From Adineta vaga (lineage: Eukaryota > Animalia > Rotifera), in NCBI GenBank assembly GCA_021613535.1, contig CP075495.1, positions 8,122,001 through 8,186,000 on the forward strand: a stretch of 64,000 bases of DNA, given 5' to 3'. How positions within the stretch are numbered: position 1 is the first letter of the stretch; each line of letters begins with the position of its first letter. Shown one piece after another: positions 3,519 to 25,464 of the stretch. The notes under the pieces were generated by a model. The model had not been told where the DNA came from. It did no database searches and was given only the letters and a program-made list of their open reading frames with translations. The position numbers were made by a program, and so were the translations under genes.

Positions 3519-6401
3519 ATGACATCGACAACATATGAATATCGATCTCATTCAAGTGAACGTTTATCATCCTCAAAAAAATCCTTTCCATCACTTCGTT
3601 CTTCTCATTCGGCATGTGCGATTGATATCAAATCCATACCATCTTCATCAACACCAGCATCATCGTCATCATCCTATTCATTAGATAATGAAACTAAAAA
3701 TGAAGAAATTATTTCGTCATCGTTATCTACACGTCCAACAAATTCAGAATTTTTTCATAAATCAAATTCATTGGATTCAGGATATAAAACTTTAAGTGCT
3801 GCTAGTCATGGAACATCACATACGGATCCAATCGATGAAGAAAATGAACATCATCATAGTTTTCTTCAAATAGCATCTTCACCATCAGTCTGTTCATCTT
3901 CATCTGATGTTGTATCAAATACAAATACAAATACAAATCAAAAACTAAATTCAAAAATTGAATTCGTTGTTGACGATGAAGATGATGTTGACGATAAACT
4001 TCCAAGATTATCGCGAAAAAATTCTAAATCAAATACCGATGGTAAAAGAATTGTTTGTTTTTTTTTCTATTTATTATTTAATCTTTTATTGACTTTTTAA
4101 AGGTTTATCAACAGGTGGCGATCGTCGTTCTCGTAAAAATAGTCTTTCGAATTATTCCGTTTCGAATTATAGTGTTCTTTTGAATGAATTCTGTTGTGCA
4201 TCATCAGACAAAATTGATGAAACAATAATCGATGAAAAAACAAATAAGAAAAAAGGTGGTTTTGCAAATACAGTAGCAACATTTTTTTCATCGAAAAAGA
4301 AAGAAGATGAACAACAACAACAACAACAACAATCAGCAGTAACACCGACGAAAAAACTCTATCGATCAAGAAGTGTTTCAGAAGCATCACTGGAACGAAC
4401 AACTATCGCCAAGTAAGTTCTTATCATGTCTATGTAAATCGTCATAAAAGTCACATTTTGATCGATTTTCTTTCTATACATCAAATATTCGTACTTGATA
4501 AGAACGAAAAATCTTTACATATATTTGTTTATTAATAACATTGGTATTCACATCGAAGTAGAGAAATTACGTTTTAAAACATATAATATAACGCATTCTT
4601 ATCGTATAATCATAGAAAGCAACATTGTTGGGATTATTTTCTTGTTTAAAAAAAAATGGTTTTTCCCTTTAGTCAAGATTCACTCGAATCAACACGAACA
4701 CATTCAATTGAAACTACCGATGATCAAACAATTAATGAATCAACACCGAACAATATTCCTACCACGACAACGTATACAATTCCATTAAAGACGGCAAAGA
4801 TTTCTACACGATCACTTCTCACAACTTCATCCTCAGTAACAAATAATGATCATCCATCATCATCTAGTTGGTTTTCTCGTCTTTCAAATCGATTCAATTC
4901 ATCGACGTCAACAATACGTTCAACACCGAAATCAAGTAGTACCGGTTTAATCTTTGAAAATCGTCCAATAAATTTACCACCAAAATCCAATGAAGAAACG
5001 CTCAAACATCAAGTTGAATATCAAAAAATGTGTTTCGAAGCAAAACGTGCTCAACAATTATTCGATGAAAAAGATCAACAACAACAACGTATCAAAATCA
5101 AACGAGAAGAATTTGTTTCGAAATCATTAAAAATATGGACACAAGAAATTTTACCCTATTGGGATAAATATGAAAGTGTTCATAATTGTCCAGATTTAGC
5201 ATTAAATGCGAAAGCTTATAAACTATGGTGGCATGGTTTACCACCACGTAAGAGAGAAAAACAACCATATAAAGATGAATGAAGAGAAATTATATGTTTC
5301 TATTCATTTAGGTATTCGAGGAAAAGTTTGGAAAATGGCAATTGGAAATGAACTTGGTATAACGTATGAATTATTTACACAACTACAAGAAATGGCAAAA
5401 GAAAAACTTGAAGAAACACGACAAGTACGTTGATATTAAAGAATAAAGAAAAAACAAGGATTTTATATTATTGTTTTCTAGGCAGAAGATGCTCGAAGTA
5501 ATCATTCAGCATCACCTCAATTACCAACAACGATGTCACATTCAAGTGAAACAACAAGTTCATATTTTGAACTTATTCAACTAGATGTATCAAGAACATT
5601 TCCACAGCTTCGTCTTTTTCAACAAAATGGACCATATCACGGTTTGTAAAACGATAAAACTATTCCACATCAATCATAATGTTTTTTTGACCTTTTCGTT
5701 TATGAGAACTGACGTATAAAATGTTAATAGAAGAAGTATTGAAAGTCAATGCTTAATATTAATATAATCTACAGAGACATATCTTTTGAAAGAATCCAGA
5801 TAAAATAGAATCGATTAATTCATTTTTCTTTATTTATTTAGAATATCTTCAATTATTACTTTGTATATATGTATATTTCTGTCCTGAGATTGGCTACGTT
5901 CAAGGTCAAGCATTTCTAGCTGCGATGTTTTTATTAAATCTTGATTTATATGATTCATTCATTTGTTTTTCAAATCTAATGCATCGTTCTTATTTTCAAA
6001 CATTCTATCGCTTTAATAATATCGAAAAATATCTTGAATTATTCAATCAATTACTTAATTATCATTTACCTAAATTAAGTGCACATTTTATTCAAATGTC
6101 AATTGAACCAAATTGTTTTGCATTAGATTGGTTTTTTACAATTTATTCGAAATCTTTACCACTTGATGTTGTTTCACGCATTTGGGATATGTTTTTTCGC
6201 GATGGCGATGCATTTATTTTTCGTACAGCTATTGCAATTTTATCTCTTTATGAAGAACGTTTATGTCAATTAGATACATTTCATTGTTTACAATTTTTAA
6301 CACGTTTACCTGATGATTTAAATGTTACATCATTATTCAAAGCAATCGATAAGATTAATTTTGATCATACGAATTGTGAATTATTTTATCTAATTGCATA
6401 A
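3519..6401 (+). CDS. TBC1D14: TBC-domain Rab GTPase-activating protein, TBC1D12/14-like, multi-exon
   Basis: ENRPINLPPKSNEETLKHQVEY, LWWHGLPPR/IRGKVWKMAIGNEL, IQLDVSRTFP, GYVQG and WFFTIYSKSLPLDVVSRIWDMFFRDG motifs, plus a long Ser-rich N-terminus. Confidence 0.88.
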
Positions 6402-6838: not shown

Positions 6839-9800
6839 ATGATTTCATTTCGTAATCGATTATTAAGAATTGTTAATTATAGAATTTGTTATTTCAAACA
6901 AATGGCTCGTATGCAATCGAATTTTAACTTCATTTCATCCTATTGTGAACCAACATTTAATGTCGACAAATATCAATCTAATAAAACGGGAATGAAATTA
7001 TATCATATTAATCTACCTTTACCTCTAATTAAACTTGAAATATGTGTACAAACAAAACCATATGATGATACTGGATGTGCACATACATTAGGTAAACTAT
7101 TGATTAAGATTTGATCATAAGAAAAATCTTTTTAATTTAGAACATTTAATATTCATGGGTAGTCGTCAATATCCTCAACAAGGTTATCTTGATTATATAT
7201 CTGCTCAGTATTATTCATTGGGTACGAATGCAACAACATATCGCGATATGACAACATATGAATTGACAACAGTCAATCATCAGTCATTATCAACACTTCT
7301 TCCGATCTATCTTGATCATATATTCAATCCATTATTAACGAATGATTGTTATTTAACTGAAGTCCATCATATATCGGGTGAAACAGGTGATGATGCAGGC
7401 GTTGTTTATAGTGAAATACAATCGAGTGAAAATCAACCTGATGAAATTCTTCTTTATTCAGTTTTACGTGATTTATGGTCAGATAAATCACCGTATTATT
7501 ATGAATCTGGTGGTCGATTAGAATCAATACGAAATGAATTAACGTTAGATAAAATAAAATTATTTCATCAAAAATTTTATACACCAAATAATGTAGCAAT
7601 CGTTTTATGTGGCGGTGGCATAAATATCAATGAAATCTTAACAATATTAAATAAATTTGAAGAAGAAAATTTTTGTCAATTAGAAAATCATCATAGAATG
7701 TCATTTGATTATTCATTAAATGAAAATTTAAGAAAGAAAATTAAATTTGATAATGATAAATTTCCTTTTATTAAAATAAAACGTGCAAGTTTTGATGAAA
7801 ATTCTATTTCATCAGAGAAAAATCCTGATACAAATCCATCAATATCGATTGATACAACGAAATTATCTGTTCAATTAACAACAACAACAGGAAATGCTAC
7901 TGATGGAAATGATTCATCATTTTGTGATTCAGAATTGATGGTTTCACATGAAGATTTATCTGTTCCATCATCACCAACAACACTTTGGTCTACAATTGAA
8001 ATTGATAATTCTATAAATCAACGTCATATGAATGAATATAAAGAAATTTTTTATCCTGTCGAAGATAATGATGAAAATCTTGGACAAGTCGCGTTTGGTT
8101 ATCGATTAGAATCTATTTATGAAATGGAAATGTATACAGCACTTGATGTTTTACTAACGACATTATTTGATGAAGATATTTCCATTTTTTATAAAGAATT
8201 TATGGAAATACCAAATACTCTATGTTCATCAATTGATCATGATTGGTTCAATTATCCTGAGAGAGTATTAACTGTTGTCTTTGAAGGTAAATAAATAACG
8301 AAATTTTCTAATCTTAGAAATAAATTTGTTTGATTTTTATATTTAGGTGTTGAAGTTGAAAATTTAACGATAGTTGCAGATAAATATTCATCTGTTCTCT
8401 ATTCAATCATTGATTCTCAAACGACAAATGATCAACTTTATACACAATTACAACGAAATATAAAGAAGAAAATTGATTTACATTTGAATGAAATCGAAAA
8501 TGAACCGTATGGTTTTCTAACAGATTTATGTTGTCTCGATCATATTTCGGAATTATCTGTAACAAAAATAGGCAATGAGAATGATGATGAACAACATTTA
8601 CATACATTTTTACAAAATAAAAAATATTTAAAAAGTCTATTCGAACGACCAATAACATACTGGCATGAATTGATTAAGAAATATCTTCTAGAATGGCCTT
8701 CAACGAAAAGAACAGTTATCTTACTTAAACCAAGTAATGATTTATTAATTGAACAACAAGGTAAATTAAAAATTATCCTTTCATACTATATTCTCTGTAG
8801 ACATCAGGAATCAAATCGATTTTTCTTTTTCAATACAGAGGTAGTTACCTGTCTTATCTAAATTTGTTTTTATTGGTTGTATCATCATCAATAGGCTTTC
8901 ATGCTTTTTAATATCATTTGTTCTACATATATACTTTTTTTCTCAGAGCAAGACGAACAACGTATATCGGAACGTCTTGAATCGCTTGGTTCCGATGAAC
9001 TTCAACGTTTAAAAACTGAACTTGATCAAGCACGTTCAAATAATAAACAATCTACATCTAACTGTGCAACTATTTCTCATCCATCCATTACATTCAATAC
9101 TCAATTACATCTTCTACCAATTGAATATCATTCAAATGAGAATTCTATTGATTTATTTCATAGTCCAACTAGTCATTTTATCAAATATATTATACATATT
9201 CCATTAAAAGATCTTCCTCAAGATCTACAATTATATTTTCCACTATTTACAAATCTACTTTTTCATACACCAATTCAATATGAAAATATTCATTTTGATA
9301 AATATCATTTTTGTGAATTAATTTCACGTGATATTCTTGATTATAATGTATCTAATGGACAATCATCATCTTCTCCCGTGCAATCAAGTTATGTTCATGG
9401 ACATTATCTTGATACATTTATAATTTCATTACAATCATTCAATAGTATCGACATGTATAAAAATACAATTGATTATTTTCGTCATGTTCTATTTGGAAGT
9501 GTTTTTGATGATTATAAAATAATTCTTGAAGAATGTGAAAAACAATTGAAAAATTTCATTGAAACCTTACAAGATGGTCAAACAATTCATCGAGCTTATT
9601 TTAATTCATTAATTCATTCGATAAATACGAATAGTTATTATCATCAAATGAATATATTTTTACAAAAAAATCTTTTAGAAAAGATCTGTAAACATCCAGA
9701 TAAATATCAACATGAAATTATATCGAAATTAAAACGAATTCAGATGTTTATTTGGAAGAATCTATCTGACATACATTTAACAATATGTGGAAATGTAGAT

Positions 9801-17528: not shown

Positions 17529-20327
17529 ATGGTTAAACGTATTTTAAGTGTTCATAGTATTAATACTATCGATCGTAAGTTCATACATAGACACGAAATT
17601 CGCTTCTTCATGACATAGATCATTGATTTTTCTCTTTAAAATAGGTGATGAACATGATATGGCACGAAAAGACTTGTTAGAAAGTAGTCCATTAACAAAT
17701 AATCGTGCTATTTCAGCACCGATGATTGATAATGGTCTATCATCATCTGATGATGAACATCCTCATCATACGAAGAAGCAAAGTGTAACAATTGTTAATG
17801 TTAAAACAACCGAATTAGCACTCAATAAATCAGGTGATCAACAAACTGAAGTACGTGAACAATGGAGCGAAAAATTGGATTTTCTTTTATCTATCATTGG
17901 TTTTGCTGTTGATCTTGCTAATATATGGCGTTTTCCATATTTATGTTATAAAAATGGTGGAGGTTTGTTTTGCATATGAATATATGTATAGATTTGCTTC
18001 ATTTCTTTAACTGTTTATTTCTAGGTGCATTTCTTATTCCATATGCTCTTTCAGTTATACTCGGTGGTATGCCTTTATTTTATTTGGAATTATTACTTGG
18101 GCAATATTATCGACAAGGTGCAATAACATGCTGGAGAAAAATTTGTCCATTATTAGCCGGCATTGGTTGGGCAGTAACAATCATTGCATTCTATACTGAT
18201 TTCTATTATAATGTTGTCATTTCATGGGGTCTTTATTATTTAATTGCTTCATTTCGACGAATACTTCCATGGAGTGAATGCAGTATGTAACCATTTAAAA
18301 TAATTGATTGATTGATTGATTGATTTCAAAATGAAAATCCTTTTTCAGGTCATCGATGGAATACACAAGATTGTTCAACGGTTGATACTCGACGTCATTT
18401 TCTTGAGAATTGTATTAATCAATTGAATGAAACATTGAATAGTACAATGGATTATTTACCAATTAATTATAATGAACAAAAATCATTTGAAAGAAGTATA
18501 TTCTATGAAAATTGTTCAGAAAAATTAACACAACAACGAATTGCTTCACCAGCCCAAGAATATTTTCAGTAAAGAAATTATTTCAATTCTATAGATTTTG
18601 ACTTGTTCCCTTTTGTTTTCTATCCTAGTTTACAAGTATATCGTCTCAATCAAACACGCAATCTTAGTTTCGAAAATCCCGGTAATGTTAATTGGGAAAA
18701 TGTTGGATGTCTTGGTTTGATCTATTTAATCTGCTATTTTTCCATGTGGAAAGGTGTTAAAACATCAGGCAAAGTAAGATTTTAGCAGAGAAAAAAACAA
18801 AGATTCATTCATATTTCTTCATTAAAGGTTGTCTGGTTTACTGCATTATTTCCATATGTTGTATTGACAATTTTAATGATACGTGGTCTTTTCTTGAATG
18901 GATCAATGAAAGGTATCGAATATTATATACGTCCAGATTTAAGCAAACTTAGCGAAGCATCGGTCTGGGTCGATGCCGCTTCACAAACATTCTTTTCGTT
19001 GGGACCTGGTTTCGGTGTATTGATGGCCTTTGCAAGTTATAATGATTTTCATCATAATGTTTTTCGGTATGAAAAGAAACATTGCTTGTTTTTTTTTCAA
19101 AAGATAATTATTTTGTTTAGAGATGCAATGATTACAGTCGCAGTAAATAGTTTAACAAGTTTTGCTAGTGGTTTCGTCATTTTCATGTTTTTGGTAAAGG
19201 AAACAATTATTTCGATTACTTTTAAGCTTTTGTATCAATGTTTCTTTTTATCTAGGGTTACATGAGCGAAATATCAGGACGAGCAATCAAAGATGTTGCT
19301 GAACAAGGTTCAACACTTGTATTCATTGTGTATCCGGAAGCTATCGCTACAATGCCATGGGCGCCGGTCTGGGCGGTATTCTTCTTCTTAATGCTCTTAA
19401 CACTTGGTTTAGATTCATCGGTGTGTAGTTTGATTTATTTGTGAATTGAAATAGTTTTGTTTGATCTCTTCCTGATTTCTAGTTTGGCGGAAGTGAAGCA
19501 ATAATAACTGCATTGAGTGACGAATTTCCTGTTCTTCGACGACATCGAGAATGGTTTGTTGGAATATTATTTTTCTTCTATTTTATCGTTGGAATTCCAA
19601 GTTGTACGGATGCTGGAGTTTATTTTGTCGAGTTATTACAAAACTATGCTGGTAATCAAAAAACAAAAATAATTTTTGCCTTCAATCTTTTCGTCGTTAT
19701 TTTTAGCATTTTATTCAATTATTATTGCCGTCTTTTTCGAAGCTATAGCCGTGTCATGGCTTTATGGAATAAGACGTATAAGCGACGATGTTAAACAAAT
19801 GCTTGGCTCAAAACCAGGACGATTTTGGCTTGGAACATGGTGTGTTGCTGCACCTGTTTTTCTCGGAGTAATAATAGTCCTAATAGTTCAAAAGTTCATT
19901 ATTAAATTTCTTCATATTAGGGTATTATTCTGTCGGGTTTAATTCAACATAGTAGTCCATCATATGGAAAACCATCTGATCCGTTTTACTATGAAGTTTG
20001 TATTATTTTTCATATTTAAATGGAATAAATAGCATAATGATTTTTATTTCTAGTATCCAGCATGGAGTCATTTACTTGGTTGGATGTTTGCCTTATCATC
20101 AATAATATTTATACCAGTAGTTGCTATTTATCAATTATTGATTGAACGCGGAAGTTTAGCCAATGTAAGAATAGAATTGAATCGAATTGATAGTATGATT
20201 ATTTCTTTTTAAATAGAGATTTCATATGGCAATAACACCATGGAAAGATCGAAAAGATCAAAATAAAGAAGTAATAGTTAGTACCAATTATGTAACGACA
20301 AAATTTATTACTGAAGAAACGATTTAA
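17529..20327 (+). CDS. DAT: SLC6 sodium-dependent monoamine transporter, dopamine-transporter-like
   Basis: [39 protein letters not shown] (TM1 Asp of monoamine transporters; the FAVDLAN form is DAT/NET type), [55 protein letters not shown]. Confidence 0.85.
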
Positions 20328-20857
20328 TAGATATTTTTTTCTAGAGTTTTTTTTGTCTATTCAGACTTTATAATAATCTTTTTTTTTCTTATCATTCTTT
20401 TTATCTGTTGTTTGTATACGCGTCTATTTCTTTCCTTTGAACACAAATTTTCATTCTCTCATTTCACATTAGCATATTTAAATTTGGGCAAGGTCATTTA
20501 TATACATCATTGATCTCTTTTATTTTCAAAGAAAATTTGCACTTTAATTCTTTCTTTACTAATCTCAACTAGAGATGGGTCGAAAGAGAAGGGAAAAAAA
20601 CGATCAAATCCTTCTCTAAGGTTATCACTCTTTTGTTTGATTACTTATGTCATCTTTTTTTTCAATCAAACAAACGTCTTGTATCATCCTTTCAACGAAG
20701 TTGACATTTGAACAGGATCAGCTTACACGTACATTCTTCATTCAATCGATCGACCTACTTTGCATAAGGAGAAAAAAAGAGATCGTTGATCATTATCATT
20801 AAAATCACTTGAGAATAAAACCATCTTTTGAATAGGCGGAGTTTGTTCTATTCACTA

Positions 20858-23350
20858 ATGAAGGTAAGTTAAAGTGAAAGTCTATGTTCAAGAATAAAAT
20901 TATAGAAAAAAACCATGATTTAGGCTTCGTTATTTCTTCTTGGTCTTCATTTACTTTATTTTTCTTCTATTAATGCCGGTAAACAAGAATGATCATACAT
21001 GTTCTATGTTATTTTCTTATTCCTCTCCTTTTTTTTCTTCTTTGAAGACTTTTGTGAAACAGACGAATGTCGCCGTGGTGACTGTGAATTAGTACGTCAA
21101 CCAACAGGTTTAATAAAGAAGAACTGTCATTGTGCGAAAGTAAATCTTTCAATTAAATTCAGATTTGTTTCCTTAGAAATCATTTTCTAGGGTATTTGCG
21201 GTGAAACATGTCAACGTTTATGTAATACTACGTCCGTATGTGATACTAATCCATGTTGGTTTGGCGGTATTTGTGTTGATGTAGCCAACTTTGATTATGT
21301 TTGTCTATGTCCACCTAATCATTCTGGCAAAGATTGTCGAGTTTTACTTTCTTGTCAAGGAAACAGTTGTTGGAATGGTGGTGCATGTATTGAAACTGGT
21401 TTGTAAATGAATAGATGACATATCAAAATACAAAGACTTCTCTTTTTATTTTAGCCTATGGTGCACGATGTAATTGTTCCAATGAATATTCAGGTGATTA
21501 TTGTCAATATAAAAAAGTTAAACCAGCAGTAAAACAAAATGAAACCGTACCACGTGTTGAATATAAACAATTCGATGCAGAAACATTAGCAGTTATTGCT
21601 AGTTTAGGAAGTTCAACTAATGAACAGACACAGCTACGTACAAGTGATTTGAGTGATAGTGTTGCCATTGCATCGGGTAATCATTCGCAGTTCGTTTTTT
21701 GTTTAACAAATCCATGTGAAAATGGTGGAACCTGTTTTGTTACAAATACAGCAACAACAAAAGTTCGATTAGATAGAGATATTGAGTATATTTTCTTTTG
21801 GGTTTTTCTAGGGAATTTGCGTATGTCGTGATGGATATGTAGGTGATTATTGTGAAGTTTTATTTAATACTACATCTCCTGCTTTTCGAATTCCGACTGG
21901 TTATTGTTCATCAAGTCCATGTTTAAATGATGGAAGTTGTGTTGAAATTGGCGATCTTCAAGGTTATTGTCGATGTACAGCTGAGTATCGAGGTCTCTAT
22001 TGTGAAATCTCGGTACGTGCTGTTAGTTGTAATCCAAATCCTTGGTAAGAACTGTAATCATTACTATCATTTTCACAAACACTTATTTTATATTTTAGTA
22101 AAAACGGTGGAACATGTGTTTTATTAGAAAATAATCAAGGTAAAGAAGACTGAAATTTTCGTCATTTTTTCTTCATAATACTTTCTATTAAAATTCATAG
22201 CACAATGTTTATGTACACCAGTATTTCGCGGTTTAAGTTGTAATCAATTTAGTTATGTGCCTTGTGGTGATGCTACATGTCATGGAACACAAGTAAATCG
22301 AAAAAAAAGAAGAGAGATTTTATTTCAAATGATTGCTTTTTTTATATTTAATTATAGGGTGTCTGTGTAGCTAATAAATGTATTTGTAAAACAGGTTTTG
22401 CTGGACCAAGATGTGATTCAACAGATTTCTGTTCAGCTTACCCATGTTTAAATGGAGGTTCGATAAAAAATAGAGATGAAATTTTTTTTTTTCTAAATTT
22501 TCATTTATAGGTACTTGTATTCGAACGAATGAAGAGCCATATGGTGGTTGCAGTTGTCCACCCGAATTTTCAGGTCCAACATGTAGTAATGATCCATGTA
22601 CACCATCACCATGTCTAAATGGTGGTTATTGTATACGAAAACCAGATAATCAATTTTATTGTCAATGTCGAAATAAAAATAAAGGCGTTTATTGTGAACG
22701 TATGTTTCTCTTCTTTATTATTATATTATATCTCCGTATATATTGTAGAGGTTGAATGTTTTCCATCGGATGCAACTGTTGATGTACTTAATAATGGTAA
22801 AGTTCCTTTATCATCATTAGAAATTGGTGCACAAGTTCGTGTAATTGATGACAATAATCAAATTAGTTATTCACCAATTATTGCTTTTCTTCATCGTGAA
22901 CTAAATGAACATGCTTTATACAAACATATTCGTACAAAAGCTTCTTTTATTGAATTATCAAAACGTCATTTAATTCATCGTCGAAACGATGGTTTTGTTT
23001 GGGCTGAGAACTTAGTTGAAGGTGACGAAATTCTTGTTTCAACATCCATTCATACAAATGAAACACAATGGGAGAAAATCATCGAAATTACTGATATTTC
23101 TAAACAAGGTCTTATGGCTCCATTAACTGAACAGGGTACAATTATTGTCAATAATATTCATGCATCCTGTTATGCTCTGGTAAAATCACATCAAGTCGCT
23201 CATTTTGCCTTAGCACCATATCGATTTTATCATCGATTATTTGGTTCATTATCGCAAACAGATTCAATGACAACACCTATTCTTTCTTATGCAAATGTTC
23301 TTTTACATTTTTTCAAAAATTTACCCATCGCAAAAGACCTTATTTTTTGA
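20858..23350 (+). CDS. Secreted protein with signal peptide, 9 EGF-like repeats and a C-terminal Hedgehog-type Hog module (Hint + sterol-recognition region)
   Basis: Spliced N-terminus MK|ASLFLLGLHLLYFSSINA. Repeated NPC/SPC-xNGGxC...CxC...GxxC units. Last exon reads VECFPSDATV...SSLEIGAQV...YSPIIAFLHR...ELSKRHLI...APLTEQGTIIVNNIHASCYA...HQVAHFALAPYRFY. Confidence 0.9.
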
Positions 23351-23871
23351 TCGATTAAATAACTTGTAGATATATAGTTATAATCGATAGATACATTAAC
23401 AAAAGACAAAAACAAAACAGTAGTCGTAGACATTGTTTGGCATTAATCATTATATGTTGTTTGAATCTTTCTCTTTTTCTGAATTAGATTTAATAAATCA
23501 ATTTGATTTTTGAAAAATCATTAATACGCATTATTTCTATTTGCCGAAATAAACATGATAGAAATGTAAAACTAATTGAATTGACTCGATTACTGTATCA
23601 CTTGTTTTTATGAAAAACCAGTTCGTTTAGCTGGAGTAATAGTTCTATAGACATATTAAATTACAAATCGAACTGTTAATAGAAGAGTACTGACGATTTT
23701 AATAAATAGTTCCAATAACATCATCCAATATACTAAAGGACTTGGTTCATTTCAATATATATTTTTCTTTTTCTTTTTGACAAAACAAAAACGAATAAAA
23801 CTAATGTACATTGGCATATTATATGAAATGTTTTCAATACTATTAATTCGATGTTTCGTATGTATATGCTT

Positions 23872-25464
23872 CTAACGTTTGGAGTATTTCAATTGATTTT
23901 TTGGTAATGATTTCTTCTTAGCAATTCGATAGTTATGATGCTTGGATTCTGATGAAGTCAAAGGATTCTTCTCAAAAGCTGGTGGATATAAAGATAATTG
24001 TTGACGCAATTTACATATTTCCATTTGTGTTCTTAAACATTTTACAGTCTGTTCTAATGCAACTTGGCATAATGATGAATGTACACGATCACTTAGTTCA
24101 TTAACCACTGTTGAGTTACGATGAATTTTGTCTAACAATAATGCATAACATAGTGCTTCTTCCTGCTTTCTTTCGAATGGTGACGTACGGGAGTCTAAGA
24201 GAGAATAATAATCATAATACCATTCTTCATCATGTCTTATTTCTGATGCTGATGCAATTTCTGAAATCTCTTTTATTAATTTATCATGCTTTTCTTGTAG
24301 TTCCGATGCCAGTATCAACAGTTCTTCTTGGACACATTCTCGTATTTCTTTCCGTACAGATTTTTTATTAAATGTATTATTCAATATATCCCGACGAATT
24401 TTCTTCTGTAAATATTCACTATCTTCCGTTACCTGCACTGGATGGTTCCATTGATACCAAGATAATATTCCCGATAGGGATGAATATTCGTGTAATTTTT
24501 TCAAATCAAATTTACATACTGATAAACGTTCATATATAATCTCCTGTACACGTTTATGTATAGGTTCAAGAAGATTTTCCTCATTAGACTTTAAAAAACG
24601 TGGAAAAATAGTATGGTCATTATATGAGCGACGCAGTAAAAGATTCTGGCGATCTTCTAGTGTTGGATACGATCTGCGAAAAAACCTGCGCCAGCGTCCA
24701 AATTGATTGAAATCGGAATCTTCCTCATTATCAAGAGGATATACATTTTGTATAACAGTTGTCGTATCTATTTCGTATTCTGACAGGAAACCATTCACTG
24801 ATGTTATATTCATCTGAACTTCATGCATAAGTTTGTTTAAAGATTTTAATAATGATGGTTGATATGTCGAGAAACAATATTCAGCAATTTTATATACATG
24901 ATGACGAAGACATGGACCAAAAAATTTGTGTGCACTTAAAATAAACATGATGAACCAATATATTTGATCGATGACATGATTTTTCGTAAAATCATATTCT
25001 TCTTTGATCATCGCAACGGCAAATTGAACAGCCATATCTTGTAGGACAGATGGTCTAATTATCTGTATATCTTTTTCTAACATAGGACTATAGACTATTG
25101 TCGAAAAAAAGGTTGTATCGACTTCTTCCAATGTAGGATCTGGATGAAAAATCATACCAAGAAAGTCGAGATGATCAATAACAGATATAATATCATTTTC
25201 TTTTGATAAATGCGTAAATAATTGTCGAATCGAATCGAATGTAAATGATTCGAGAATAGCTGGAAAATATTTGAATTGAATCAGTGGATCGAGCTTATAA
25301 TAACCATCATTATCATATAATGATACGAAATTATCGGCTGCAGAAACCAGAGTAGCTACATATGGTATTTTTTCGATTTGTTCTTCAGTGAGGGTAAGAA
25401 TCTCACCAGAACCGAATCGAAACGTTTTTTCTTTAAGTAATGTTACAGTAGTATCATCAACCAT
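23872..25464 (-). CDS. Uninterrupted 530-aa ORF; uncharacterised protein with possible N-terminal BTB/POZ-like fold
   Basis: A long ORF in AT-rich DNA. The N-terminal pattern LTEEQIEKIPYVATLV...LDPLIQFKYFPAILE...LDFLG is reminiscent of BTB/Skp1 domains (weak). Confidence 0.7.
   Translation of the reverse strand: MVDDTTVTLLKEKTFRFGSGEILTLTEEQIEKIPYVATLVSAADNFVSLYDNDGYYKLDPLIQFKYFPAILESFTFDSIRQLFTHLSKENDIISVIDHLDFLGMIFHPDPTLEEVDTTFFSTIVYSPMLEKDIQIIRPSVLQDMAVQFAVAMIKEEYDFTKNHVIDQIYWFIMFILSAHKFFGPCLRHHVYKIAEYCFSTYQPSLLKSLNKLMHEVQMNITSVNGFLSEYEIDTTTVIQNVYPLDNEEDSDFNQFGRWRRFFRRSYPTLEDRQNLLLRRSYNDHTIFPRFLKSNEENLLEPIHKRVQEIIYERLSVCKFDLKKLHEYSSLSGILSWYQWNHPVQVTEDSEYLQKKIRRDILNNTFNKKSVRKEIRECVQEELLILASELQEKHDKLIKEISEIASASEIRHDEEWYYDYYSLLDSRTSPFERKQEEALCYALLLDKIHRNSTVVNELSDRVHSSLCQVALEQTVKCLRTQMEICKLRQQLSLYPPAFEKNPLTSSESKHHNYRIAKKKSLPKNQLKYSKR

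What the first reader, a model, noticed from the sequence alone, without database searches (positions are those of the whole stretch)
20858..23350. EGF-Hog fusion: candidate self-cleaving, possibly sterol-tagged secreted EGF-repeat protein
Seen: the spliced gene encodes a signal peptide, nine EGF-like repeats (with a Cys-free linker after the third) and then, with no transmembrane segment, a Hint domain starting at Cys codon 22757. This is followed by APLT..GTIIVNNIHASCYA and an SRR-like tail (HQVAHFALAPYRFY...ILSYANVL). Established: in Hedgehog the Hog module cleaves at its N-terminal Cys and transfers the upstream domain to cholesterol; nematode warthog/groundhog/quahog genes fuse Hog to other secreted domains. 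Inference: here the released cargo would be a Notch/Delta-style EGF array rather than Hedge, giving a hedgehog-related signalling or surface-anchoring protein with an architecture I do not recognise as a named family.
Basis: partly seen in the sequence, partly recalled or inferred. Interest (0 to 1): 0.88.

Follow-up and report, generated by a model that had tools for sequence, protein, structure and literature searches.

The report
Rotifer nine-EGF protein with Hedgehog-type self-cleaving domain
This is a real, transcribed bdelloid-rotifer gene that joins a secreted array of nine EGF repeats to a complete Hedgehog-type self-cleaving (Hog) domain: a new, conserved cargo for a known processing module that probably leaves the EGF array carrying a sterol, though no cleavage or lipid has been shown.

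Summary
An 11-exon gene (20858-23350, + strand, 641 codons) encodes a signal peptide, nine EGF repeats with a 65-residue Cys-free linker after the third, and a 197-residue Hint plus sterol-recognition (Hog) domain that starts at the Cys codon 22757. Spliced contigs from three runs in two studies confirm eight of the ten introns. One contig joins EGF exons 6-10 to the Hint exon, while a DNA run holds only the unspliced form.

All catalytic positions are occupied: Cys1, His72, Cys143, Ser for Thr69, and His for the Asp46 general base. Engineered D46H Hedgehog is active. The SRR H-P-R motif is also kept.

Full-length orthologues of 632-643 aa exist in Adineta, Rotaria and Didymodactylos, with the same exon order and dN/dS of 0.08-0.2.

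It is not a Hedgehog (no Hedge domain) and not a DSL Notch ligand. I read it as a new cargo variant of the known family of Hog proteins with variable N-termini. I found no paper that describes an EGF-Hog. Public databases hold it only as an unnamed "EGF-like domain-containing protein".

The scan found a sister copy before on another piece of this genome (s1-489407). Cleavage and sterol transfer remain untested.

The parts
20858..20978 (+). Exons 1 (20858-20863, Met-Lys) and 2 (20924-20978), encoding a 20-residue signal peptide; predicted cut after ...Ile-Asn-Ala
   Evidence: Reading frames and GT..AG sites. It is the only hydrophobic stretch. Rotaria L003 has the same 6-nt plus 55-nt mini-exon structure. 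Public full-length models start the same way. No RNA contig covers it.
21048..21504 (+). EGF repeats 1-3 (EGF1 21053-21223 with eight Cys, EGF2 21239-21337, EGF3 21353-21504), spanning exons 3-5
   Evidence: Translation. Pfam EGF/EGF_2 hits on exon 4. Introns 21140-21190 and 21399-21454 seen in spliced contigs.
21505..21699 (+). Cys-free linker of 65 residues inside exon 5; the least conserved part of the protein
   Evidence: Translation. Exon 5 is 42-74% identical across orthologues, against 87-100% for exons 7-10.
21700..22695 (+). EGF repeats 4-9 (21700-21853, 21905-22003, 22028-22241, 22263-22414, 22430-22584, 22597-22695) over exons 5-10. O-fucose-type C2-x4-S/T-C3 motifs occur in EGF4, 5, 6 and 8.
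   Evidence: Pfam EGF hits on the exons. EGF and EGF_TEN score above threshold on orthologues. Best solved relatives are Notch1 and DLL1 EGF repeats. The motifs are conserved in five orthologues. All introns are seen in spliced contigs.
22754..22759 (+). Predicted autocleavage site Glu444|Cys445 (Glu codon 22754-22756, Cys codon 22757-22759)
   Evidence: Aligns with Cys258 of Drosophila Hh. Cys is invariant in 74/74 Hog sequences and Glu at -1 is present in all 21 orthologues.
22757..23176 (+). Hint fold. Key residues: His490 (22892-22894, at the Asp46 general-base position), Ser512 (22958-22960, at Thr69), His515 (22967-22969, at His72), Cys582 (23168-23170, at Cys143 in SCYA)
   Evidence: Pfam PF01079 E = 6.6e-43. 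PDB sequence match to Drosophila Hh-C, E = 1e-22. AlphaFold2 model pLDDT 88, best matches 6TYY and 1AT0 at rmsd 1.5 A and TM 0.91-0.92. Column counts.
23177..23350 (+). SRR-like tail of 57 residues: helix 1 with the His-x4-Pro-x-Arg motif (codons starting at 23201, 23216 and 23222), a loop, helix 2 (...LSYANVLL...), and the stop at 23348-23350
   Evidence: Predicted helices 147-167 and 178-188 of the exon-11 peptide. His/Pro/Arg are present in at least 68 of 74 Hog sequences. The motif is required for SHH cholesterolysis in cells (PMC7906309).
23351..23528 (+). 3' UTR, with AATAAA at 23492-23497
   Evidence: Spliced contigs run on to 23441 (X1) and 23528 (X5). Sequence read.

Best explanation
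The gene encodes a secreted precursor of a bdelloid rotifer (most likely Adineta vaga): signal peptide, nine Notch/Delta-type EGF repeats, then a complete Hedgehog-type Hog domain (Hint fold plus sterol-recognition tail).

Shown here:
- The gene is transcribed and spliced as modelled.
- EGF and Hint lie in one mRNA.
- The architecture and exon order are conserved across three bdelloid genera under purifying selection.
- The Hint part folds like Drosophila Hh-C in prediction and has a residue at every catalytic position.

Inferred mechanism:
1. In the ER, Cys445 attacks the Glu444 carbonyl in an N-to-S acyl shift, helped by the Ser512/His515 pair that stands for the Hedgehog TxxH motif.
2. The thioester may pass through Cys582.
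3. The thioester is resolved by the 3-hydroxyl of a sterol held by the SRR helices and activated by His490. This is the natural counterpart of the engineered, active D46H Hedgehog.

The predicted product is a 424-residue EGF array esterified to a sterol four residues after its last cysteine. It would therefore be tethered to the outer membrane leaflet or carried on lipid carriers. The 197-residue Hog fragment would be discarded.

The function of the EGF array is not known. Cell-surface adhesion or matrix organisation, or a juxtacrine ligand, are all possible. EGF6-9 are the most constrained part of the protein.
For: Gene model and splice sites.

Transcripts: spliced contigs cover every junction from exon 3 to exon 11. 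One 1339-nt contig carries exons 6-11 plus the 3' UTR. The EGF-to-Hint joint appears in X1, X2 and X5 (two studies). The DNA run X8 holds only the unspliced form.

Domain and fold:
- Hint PF01079, E = 6.6e-43.
- Drosophila Hh-C, E = 1e-22, aligned through the SRR.
- AlphaFold2 pLDDT 88; best solved matches 6TYY (Hh D46H) and 1AT0, TM 0.91-0.92, rmsd 1.5 A.

Catalytic columns in 74 Hog sequences: Cys1 74/74, His72 74/74, Cys143 73/74, SRR His/Pro/Arg at least 68/74. His at position 46 and Ser at position 69 occur in all 21 orthologues, and the His/Ser pair occurs in 51/74 overall.

Literature:
- D303H keeps structure and activity and widens sterol tolerance (PMC9163320).
- HhC tolerates heterologous N-terminal fusions (PMC13738340).
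- The HPR motif is needed for cholesterolysis in cells (PMC7906309).

Conservation:
- Collinear exons in L008, L003 (Rotaria magnacalcarata) and L004 (Didymodactylos carnosus).
- Full-length 632-643 aa models in A. ricciae, A. steineri and Rotaria sp..
- dN/dS 0.08-0.15 for EGF exons and about 0.2 for Hint.
- The Hint sequences of the orthologues form one clade with 97% support.
Against: - No cleavage, thioester or lipid adduct has been observed for this or any rotifer Hog protein.
- The -1 residue is Glu, not the Gly of Hedgehog. The effect of Glu on the acyl shift was not tested here.
- For nematode Hog proteins the literature itself leaves open whether a sterol is the adduct (PMC2362128).
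- The general base is His rather than Asp. This is supported only by an engineered fly mutant.
- The SRR loop and second helix are modelled at low confidence (pLDDT 57-72).
- The 5' exons are not covered by RNA contigs. Two public gene models splice an upstream SLC6 transporter onto the EGF exons.
- The runs that show splicing are only guessed to be RNA.
Confidence: 0.7

Rival explanations
1. The Hog domain cleaves itself, but the thioester is resolved by water or by some nucleophile other than a sterol. The EGF array is then released as a soluble, unlipidated secreted protein, and the Hog domain acts only as a self-removing pro-domain.
For: The Glu at -1 and the His/Ser active-site flavour differ from sterol-transferring Hedgehogs. 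The adduct of non-Hh Hog proteins is an open question in the literature (PMC2362128). Thioester formation does not need sterol (PMC13738340).
Against: The SRR is the part needed only for sterol transfer. It is kept here with its His-Pro-Arg motif and both helices. A His general base supports sterol transfer in engineered Hh. A plain pro-domain would not need 57 conserved SRR residues.
Confidence: 0.2
2. The true product is a fusion of the upstream SLC6 (sodium:neurotransmitter symporter) gene with the EGF-Hint exons, as annotated in Rotaria magnacalcarata and Didymodactylos carnosus. The signal-peptide exons would then not be used.
For: NCBI models P0228 (1064 aa) and P0232 (1157 aa) join SNF, EGF and Hint. 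The same gene order, with the SLC6 gene ending about 530 nt upstream on the same strand, holds in the window. RNA contigs do not cover 20500-21061.
Against: - The SLC6 frame runs on after the ...ITPWK motif to its own stop at 20325-20327.
- The 6-nt plus 55-nt signal-peptide exons are conserved in Rotaria.
- Five independent full-length models of 632-643 aa start with Met-Lys plus a hydrophobic stretch.
- From established SLC6 topology, a C-terminal fusion would place a disulfide-rich EGF array in the cytoplasm.
- The Didymodactylos model also skips parts of EGF1 and EGF2, a sign of a poor automatic model.
Confidence: 0.04
3. The Hint domain is catalytically dead or is used only as a structural or binding module, and the protein works uncleaved.
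For: Asp46 and Thr69 of Hedgehog are both replaced, and Gly-1 is replaced by Glu.
Against: The replacements are conservative or known to be functional (Ser for Thr; His for Asp). They are shared by 51 of the 74 Hog sequences aligned here. Cys1, His72 and Cys143 are strictly kept under purifying selection.
Confidence: 0.05

Closest known systems
Hedgehog (Hh/Shh) precursor, C-terminal autoprocessing domain (Hint + SRR; PDB 1AT0, 6TYY, 6TD6)
   Same: Same fold and order of motifs: Cys-Phe start, xxxH motif, SCYA with the second Cys, and SRR helix 1 with His-x4-Pro-x-Arg followed by helix 2. It is about 30% identical to fly HhC. It has a signal peptide and carries the cargo directly upstream of the Cys.
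   Different: The cargo is nine EGF repeats, not the Hedge (HH_signal) domain. The junction is Glu-Cys rather than Gly-Cys. His replaces the Asp46 general base and Ser replaces Thr69. There is no N-terminal Cys for palmitoylation. The Hint sequence does not group with Hh Hint sequences in the tree.
Hh-related Hog proteins with other N-termini: nematode warthog/groundhog/quahog, cnidarian Hog genes, Lophohog, choanoflagellate Hoglet, Glomus GIN1 (PMC2362128, PMC9695228)
   Same: The same principle applies: a secreted, lineage-specific N-terminal domain is fused to a Hog module. It belongs to a lineage-specific set of Hog genes (other Hog genes are noted in this genome).
   Different: The N-terminus here is a long array of a widespread, recognisable domain (EGF) rather than a lineage-specific novel domain. 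In the papers I could search, none of the named families has EGF repeats before the Hog domain.
EGF-only membrane-tethered proteins of the Notch ligand periphery (DLK1; EGF repeats of Notch1 and DLL1)
   Same: The EGF repeats match Notch1, DLL1 and DLK1 repeats best (E = 5e-20 to 2e-10). Four of them carry the O-fucose consensus. The predicted product is an EGF array held at the membrane.
   Different: There is no DSL or MNNL domain, no transmembrane helix and no cytoplasmic tail. Tethering would be by a lipid added by the Hog domain. No link to Notch signalling is shown.

Membership tests
Hog-domain (Hint + SRR/ARR) autoprocessing proteins | Hint module (Pfam PF01079) above the gathering score, at the C-terminus | tested here: met
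   147 bits against a cut-off of 29.7, covering model positions 12-207 of 213. Predicted fold matches 1AT0 and 6TYY at rmsd 1.5 A.
Hog-domain (Hint + SRR/ARR) autoprocessing proteins | Nucleophilic Cys (followed by Phe) at the start of the Hint module, His of the TxxH block, and the second Cys in SCYA | tested here: met
   Cys445-Phe, Ser-x-x-His515 and Ser-Cys582-Tyr-Ala align with Cys258, Thr326/His329 and Cys400 of fly Hh. The Cys and His columns are invariant or nearly so in 74 sequences.
Hog-domain (Hint + SRR/ARR) autoprocessing proteins | General base at Hint position 46 (Asp in Hedgehog) | tested here: inconclusive
   The residue here is His, not Asp. His occurs in 60/74 Hog sequences, and engineered D46H is active (PMC9163320). 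Activity of the natural His was not measured.
Hog-domain (Hint + SRR/ARR) autoprocessing proteins | C-terminal sterol/adduct recognition region with two helices and the His-Pro-Arg motif | tested here: met
   The fly Hh alignment runs through the SRR. The HPR columns are at least 92% conserved. Helices are predicted at 147-167 and 178-188.
Hog-domain (Hint + SRR/ARR) autoprocessing proteins | Entry into the secretory pathway (signal peptide) | tested here: met
   There is an N-terminal hydrophobic stretch of 20 residues and no other one. It is conserved in orthologues. No dedicated signal-peptide predictor was available.
Hog-domain (Hint + SRR/ARR) autoprocessing proteins | Self-cleavage with transfer of the N-terminal part to a sterol or other adduct | not testable with these tools
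   This needs protein expression and mass spectrometry.
Bona fide Hedgehog | N-terminal Hedge signalling domain (Pfam PF01085 HH_signal) | tested here: not met
   No HH_signal hit on any exon or on the full-length orthologue P0237, whereas true Hh proteins in the same search set do hit it.
Bona fide Hedgehog | Gly-Cys-Phe cleavage motif and an N-terminal Cys for palmitoylation after the signal peptide | tested here: not met
   The junction is Glu-Cys-Phe in all 21 orthologues. The mature N-terminus starts Asp-Phe-Cys.
DSL-type Notch ligands (Delta/Serrate/Jagged) | DSL and MNNL domains before the EGF repeats, plus a transmembrane helix and cytoplasmic tail | tested here: not met
   Pfam finds only EGF-type and Hint models. 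There is no second hydrophobic stretch.
Nematode warthog/groundhog/quahog and Lophohog | Family-specific N-terminal domain (Wart, Ground, Qua, Lophohog) | tested here: not met
   The N-terminus consists of EGF repeats, and Pfam returns no Ground-like or other such domain. Lophohog has no Pfam model, so that comparison rests on its published description as a unique domain (PMC9695228).
Teneurins (EGF_TEN, PF25024) | Teneurin EGF block together with the teneurin intracellular, TM, NHL/YD-shell and Tox-GHH parts | tested here: not met
   EGF_TEN scores above its cut-off on the orthologues (83 bits against 65), but no other teneurin domain is present. The resemblance lies in the EGF array only.

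The most novel reading that the evidence does not exclude
The bdelloid EGF-Hog could be a second kind of sterol-anchored extracellular protein in animals besides Hedgehog: an O-fucosylated, Notch/Delta-like EGF array that is lipid-tethered by its own Hog domain and acts as a short-range ligand or adhesion molecule. On this reading the natural His general base, shared with most non-Hh Hog proteins sampled here, would give broad sterol tolerance suited to scavenged sterols. If so, protein sterylation is a general, modular anchoring device and not a Hedgehog peculiarity.
Probability: 0.3. Interest if true: 0.8.

Novelty: new variant of a known kind. Interest (0 to 1): 0.5.

Why it matters
Covalent sterol attachment to a protein is firmly established only for Hedgehog. 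Whether the many other Hog-domain proteins sterylate their cargo has been open since they were found in nematodes (PMC2362128).

This rotifer protein is a clean test case for three reasons. Its cargo is a well-understood, easily detected domain type. Its SRR keeps the residues known to matter for cholesterolysis. Its active site carries the natural version of the D46H swap that widens sterol choice in the fly enzyme.

It also shows that a common extracellular module (EGF) can be recruited as Hog cargo and then be kept under stronger constraint than the Hog domain itself across bdelloid rotifers.

On the practical side, it flags two public gene models that wrongly merge this gene with the neighbouring SLC6 transporter.

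Tried and rejected
- **Joined protein left out.** Exons were searched by reference, and public full-length orthologues (P0237 and others) stood in for the whole protein.
- **ESM Atlas.** The searches gave only generic Hint clusters for a partial orthologue and nothing usable for the full-length one.
- **EGF+Hint outside bdelloids.** The search with the region option found only five bdelloid proteins. This tool needs shared 5-mers, so absence elsewhere is not shown. Among the best 150 representatives of the exhaustive Hint search, 30 long proteins were Pfam-scanned and none had EGF. The other 3800-odd hits could not be listed.
- **Hint tree.** The tree (quick method) does not resolve deep relations. 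I therefore make no claim on whether the EGF-Hog Hint derives from hh or from an older Hog lineage.
- **RGD motif in EGF1.** Rejected as functional evidence. It reads RGGD, RGGE or RSGD in the other lineages and RRGD only in A. ricciae P0237.
- **Apparent O-fucose match CRVLLSC.** Rejected, because it spans two repeats.
- **Zhao et al. 2019 (PMC7106946).** Not held, so the D46H data are cited from the 2022 review.
- **Odd joint 21762 to 23757.** It has 22-nt sides, is GT..AT, and is present in the DNA run too. I take it as a short chance or repeat match, not as splicing.
Full report
**Observation.**
The region 20858-23350 on the + strand of this AT-rich window (29.5% G+C) holds an 11-exon gene. 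The exons are:

| Exon | Coordinates |
|---|---|
| 1 | 20858-20863 |
| 2 | 20924-20978 |
| 3 | 21048-21139 |
| 4 | 21191-21398 |
| 5 | 21455-21762 |
| 6 | 21812-22044 |
| 7 | 22099-22139 |
| 8 | 22201-22292 |
| 9 | 22358-22457 |
| 10 | 22511-22699 |
| 11 | 22749-23350 |

The ten introns are 49-69 nt long and all are GT..AG. The exons add up to 1926 nt, or 641 codons plus the stop.

Read exon by exon, the product has these parts:
- A 20-residue signal peptide, the only hydrophobic stretch.
- Nine EGF repeats. The first has eight Cys and the others six.
- A 65-residue Cys-free linker after the third repeat.
- A 197-residue C-terminal domain that begins at the Cys codon 22757, four residues after the last EGF cysteine.

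Pfam gives Hint (PF01079) at E = 6.6e-43 on the last exon and EGF-type models on the upstream exons.

**Transcription and exon joining.**
Contigs of four public runs were laid on 20500-23800. Run X8 holds only collinear, unspliced pieces and behaves as genomic DNA.

Runs X1 and X2 (one study) and X5 (another study) hold contigs that skip exactly the predicted introns 3 to 10:
- One X1 contig of 1339 nt carries exons 6-11 and 90 nt of 3' UTR.
- An X2 contig of 686 nt links exon 5 to exon 10.
- Other contigs link exons 3-4-5.
- The EGF-to-Hint joint 22699|22749 is seen in all three runs.

These runs are only guessed to be RNA, but they carry spliced forms that the DNA run lacks. Exons 1 and 2 are not covered.

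Exons were searched by reference, and public full-length orthologues were used where a whole protein was needed.

**The 5' end and the neighbouring gene.**
About 530 nt upstream on the same strand, an SLC6 (sodium:neurotransmitter symporter) gene ends with its own stop at 20325-20327.

NCBI models of Rotaria magnacalcarata (P0228, 1064 aa) and Didymodactylos carnosus (P0232, 1157 aa) splice that transporter onto the EGF exons. I read this as an annotation artefact, for four reasons:
- The Rotaria locus L003 has the same ATG-AAA|GTAAGT mini-exon followed by a 55-nt exon encoding a hydrophobic stretch that ends ...Ile-Asn-Ala.
- Five independent full-length models of 632-643 aa start with Met-Lys plus such a stretch. 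They come from Adineta ricciae (two), A. steineri, Rotaria sp. Silwood2 and one Logan assembly.
- From established SLC6 topology, a C-terminal fusion would put a disulfide-rich EGF array in the cytoplasm.
- The Didymodactylos model also skips parts of EGF1 and EGF2.

Read-through transcripts are not excluded by my data.

**Organism and conservation.**
- All named relatives are bdelloid rotifers.
- The window's exons are 88% identical to A. ricciae P0237.
I did not verify that independently.
- Exons 3-11 are collinear in a close relative (L008), in Rotaria (L003) and in Didymodactylos (L004).
- The Hint sequences of 21 orthologues form one clade with 97% support, and Didymodactylos branches first.
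- Nei-Gojobori dN/dS is 0.08-0.15 for the EGF exons and about 0.2 for the Hint exon.
- EGF6-9 are 87-100% identical across genera and the Hint exon 53-83%. The cargo is therefore at least as constrained as the processing domain.
- A. ricciae has two copies, and the scan has already noted a sister locus on another piece of this genome (s1-489407). This fits the degenerate tetraploidy of bdelloids.

**The Hog domain.**
The last exon aligns with Drosophila Hh-C from Cys258 through the SRR (E = 1e-22).

An AlphaFold2 model built on 74 Hog sequences has mean pLDDT 88. It shows the all-beta Hint core followed by two helices. Its best solved matches are 6TYY (Hh D46H) and 1AT0, with target TM-scores of 0.91-0.92 and rmsd 1.5 A, ahead of inteins.

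Catalytic positions:

| Residue here | Equivalent in fly Hh | Conservation in the 74 aligned Hog sequences |
|---|---|---|
| Cys445 | Cys1 | 74/74 |
| His515 | His72 | 74/74 |
| Cys582 | Cys143 | 73/74 |
| Ser512 | Thr69 | replaces Thr |
| His490 | Asp46 (general base) | replaces Asp |

The His/Ser pair occurs in all orthologues and in 51 of the 74 aligned Hog sequences. The Asp/Thr pair goes with Gly at -1 in canonical Hedgehog.

The literature supports a working His at this position. The engineered D303H (D46H) fly enzyme keeps its structure, pKa and cholesterol activity. It also gains more than 200-fold activity on coprostanol-type sterols (PMC9163320).

The SRR keeps the His-x4-Pro-x-Arg motif of helix 1, with the same spacing as human SHH His374/Pro379/Arg381, and the Tyr-containing helix 2. 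These residues are needed for cholesterolysis in cells (PMC7906309). They are at least 92% conserved in my alignment.

HhC domains tolerate heterologous N-terminal fusions (PMC13738340).

**The cargo.**
- The EGF repeats match Notch1, DLL1, Notch2 and DLK1 repeats best (E = 5e-20 to 2e-10).
- On the orthologues they also pass the teneurin EGF-array model.
- Four repeats (EGF4, 5, 6 and 8) carry the C2-x4-Ser/Thr-C3 O-fucose consensus in all orthologues, and one O-glucose consensus is present in some. That these motifs mark glycosylation sites is established knowledge about EGF repeats and was not tested here.
- There is no DSL, MNNL, Hedge, Ground-like or other domain, and no membrane helix.

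**Most likely mechanism.**
Shown: one mRNA, a conserved architecture, and intact catalytic and sterol-recognition residues.

Inferred: in the ER, Cys445 forms a thioester with Glu444. A sterol bound by the SRR and activated by His490 displaces it. This yields a 424-residue EGF array esterified at its C-terminal Glu, only four residues beyond the last disulfide-bonded cysteine, plus a free Hog fragment.

My probability estimates are:
- Self-cleavage: about 0.8.
- A sterol or similar lipid adduct: about 0.55.
- A Notch-related signalling role: about 0.1.

Rivals are cleavage without lipidation, a real SLC6 fusion, and a non-catalytic Hint domain.

**Comparison and novelty.**
It works like the Hedgehog precursor but is not a Hedgehog. 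It has no Hedge domain, its junction is Glu-Cys, and it has no palmitoylation Cys.

It belongs with the Hh-related Hog proteins whose N-termini vary: warthog, groundhog, quahog, cnidarian Hogs, Lophohog, Hoglet and GIN1 (PMC2362128, PMC9695228).

Public proteins related to this Hint domain carry many other cargos: trypsin, matrixin, multicopper oxidase, PAN, MACPF, AIG1 GTPase, an AID/APOBEC-like deaminase, and HH_signal with or without an LDLa repeat.

Four full-text searches found no paper describing an EGF-Hog or rotifer Hog proteins. UniRef calls the orthologues only "EGF-like domain-containing protein".

I rate it a new variant of a known kind, of moderate interest. It is a good test case for the old open question of whether non-Hedgehog Hog proteins sterylate their cargo.

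Noticed in passing
window 19900-20327 (+); L003 about 4362-4420; L004 about 6216-6290: An SLC6/SNF transporter gene ends just upstream (stop at 20325-20327). The order SLC6 then EGF-Hog is kept in Rotaria and Didymodactylos. The public models CAF3821787 and CAF0766732 merge the two genes, and UniRef names them 'Transporter'.
   Followed up: partly
alignment A1 (74 Hog sequences): Hog active sites come in two correlated flavours: His46/Ser69 (51 sequences) and Asp46/Thr69 (11, including canonical Hh with Gly at -1). Two proteins with a Hedge domain (P0007, P0012) carry the His/Ser flavour. The natural His mirrors the engineered D46H mutant.
   Followed up: partly
P0003, P0031, P0052, P0059, P0081, P0097, P0109, P0143 (metagenome proteins): Hog domains are fused to trypsin, matrixin, multicopper oxidase, PAN, MACPF and an AID/APOBEC-like deaminase. 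P0007 has HH_signal plus an LDLa repeat plus Hint. P0005 and P0093 hold two or three Hint modules. Their source organisms are unknown.
   Followed up: no
window 23872-25464 (-): A 530-codon intronless ORF lies directly downstream on the opposite strand, with no Pfam match.
   Followed up: partly
L004 8485-9793: In Didymodactylos the intron between exons 6 and 7 seems to be missing (matches end at 9751 and restart at 9755). The gap between exons 5 and 6 is about 1 kb, against 49 nt in the window.
   Followed up: no
window 21741-21762 and 23757-23778: A contig in both the DNA run X8 and run X1 joins 21762 to 23757 (GT..AT, 22-nt sides, unrelated letters on both flanks). It is probably a short repeat or chance match from another locus, not splicing.
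   Followed up: no
window 21071-21079 (EGF1): An Arg-Gly-Asp triplet sits in EGF1. It is shared with A. ricciae P0237 but reads RGGD, RGGE or RSGD in the other orthologues, so it is probably not a conserved integrin motif.
   Followed up: yes
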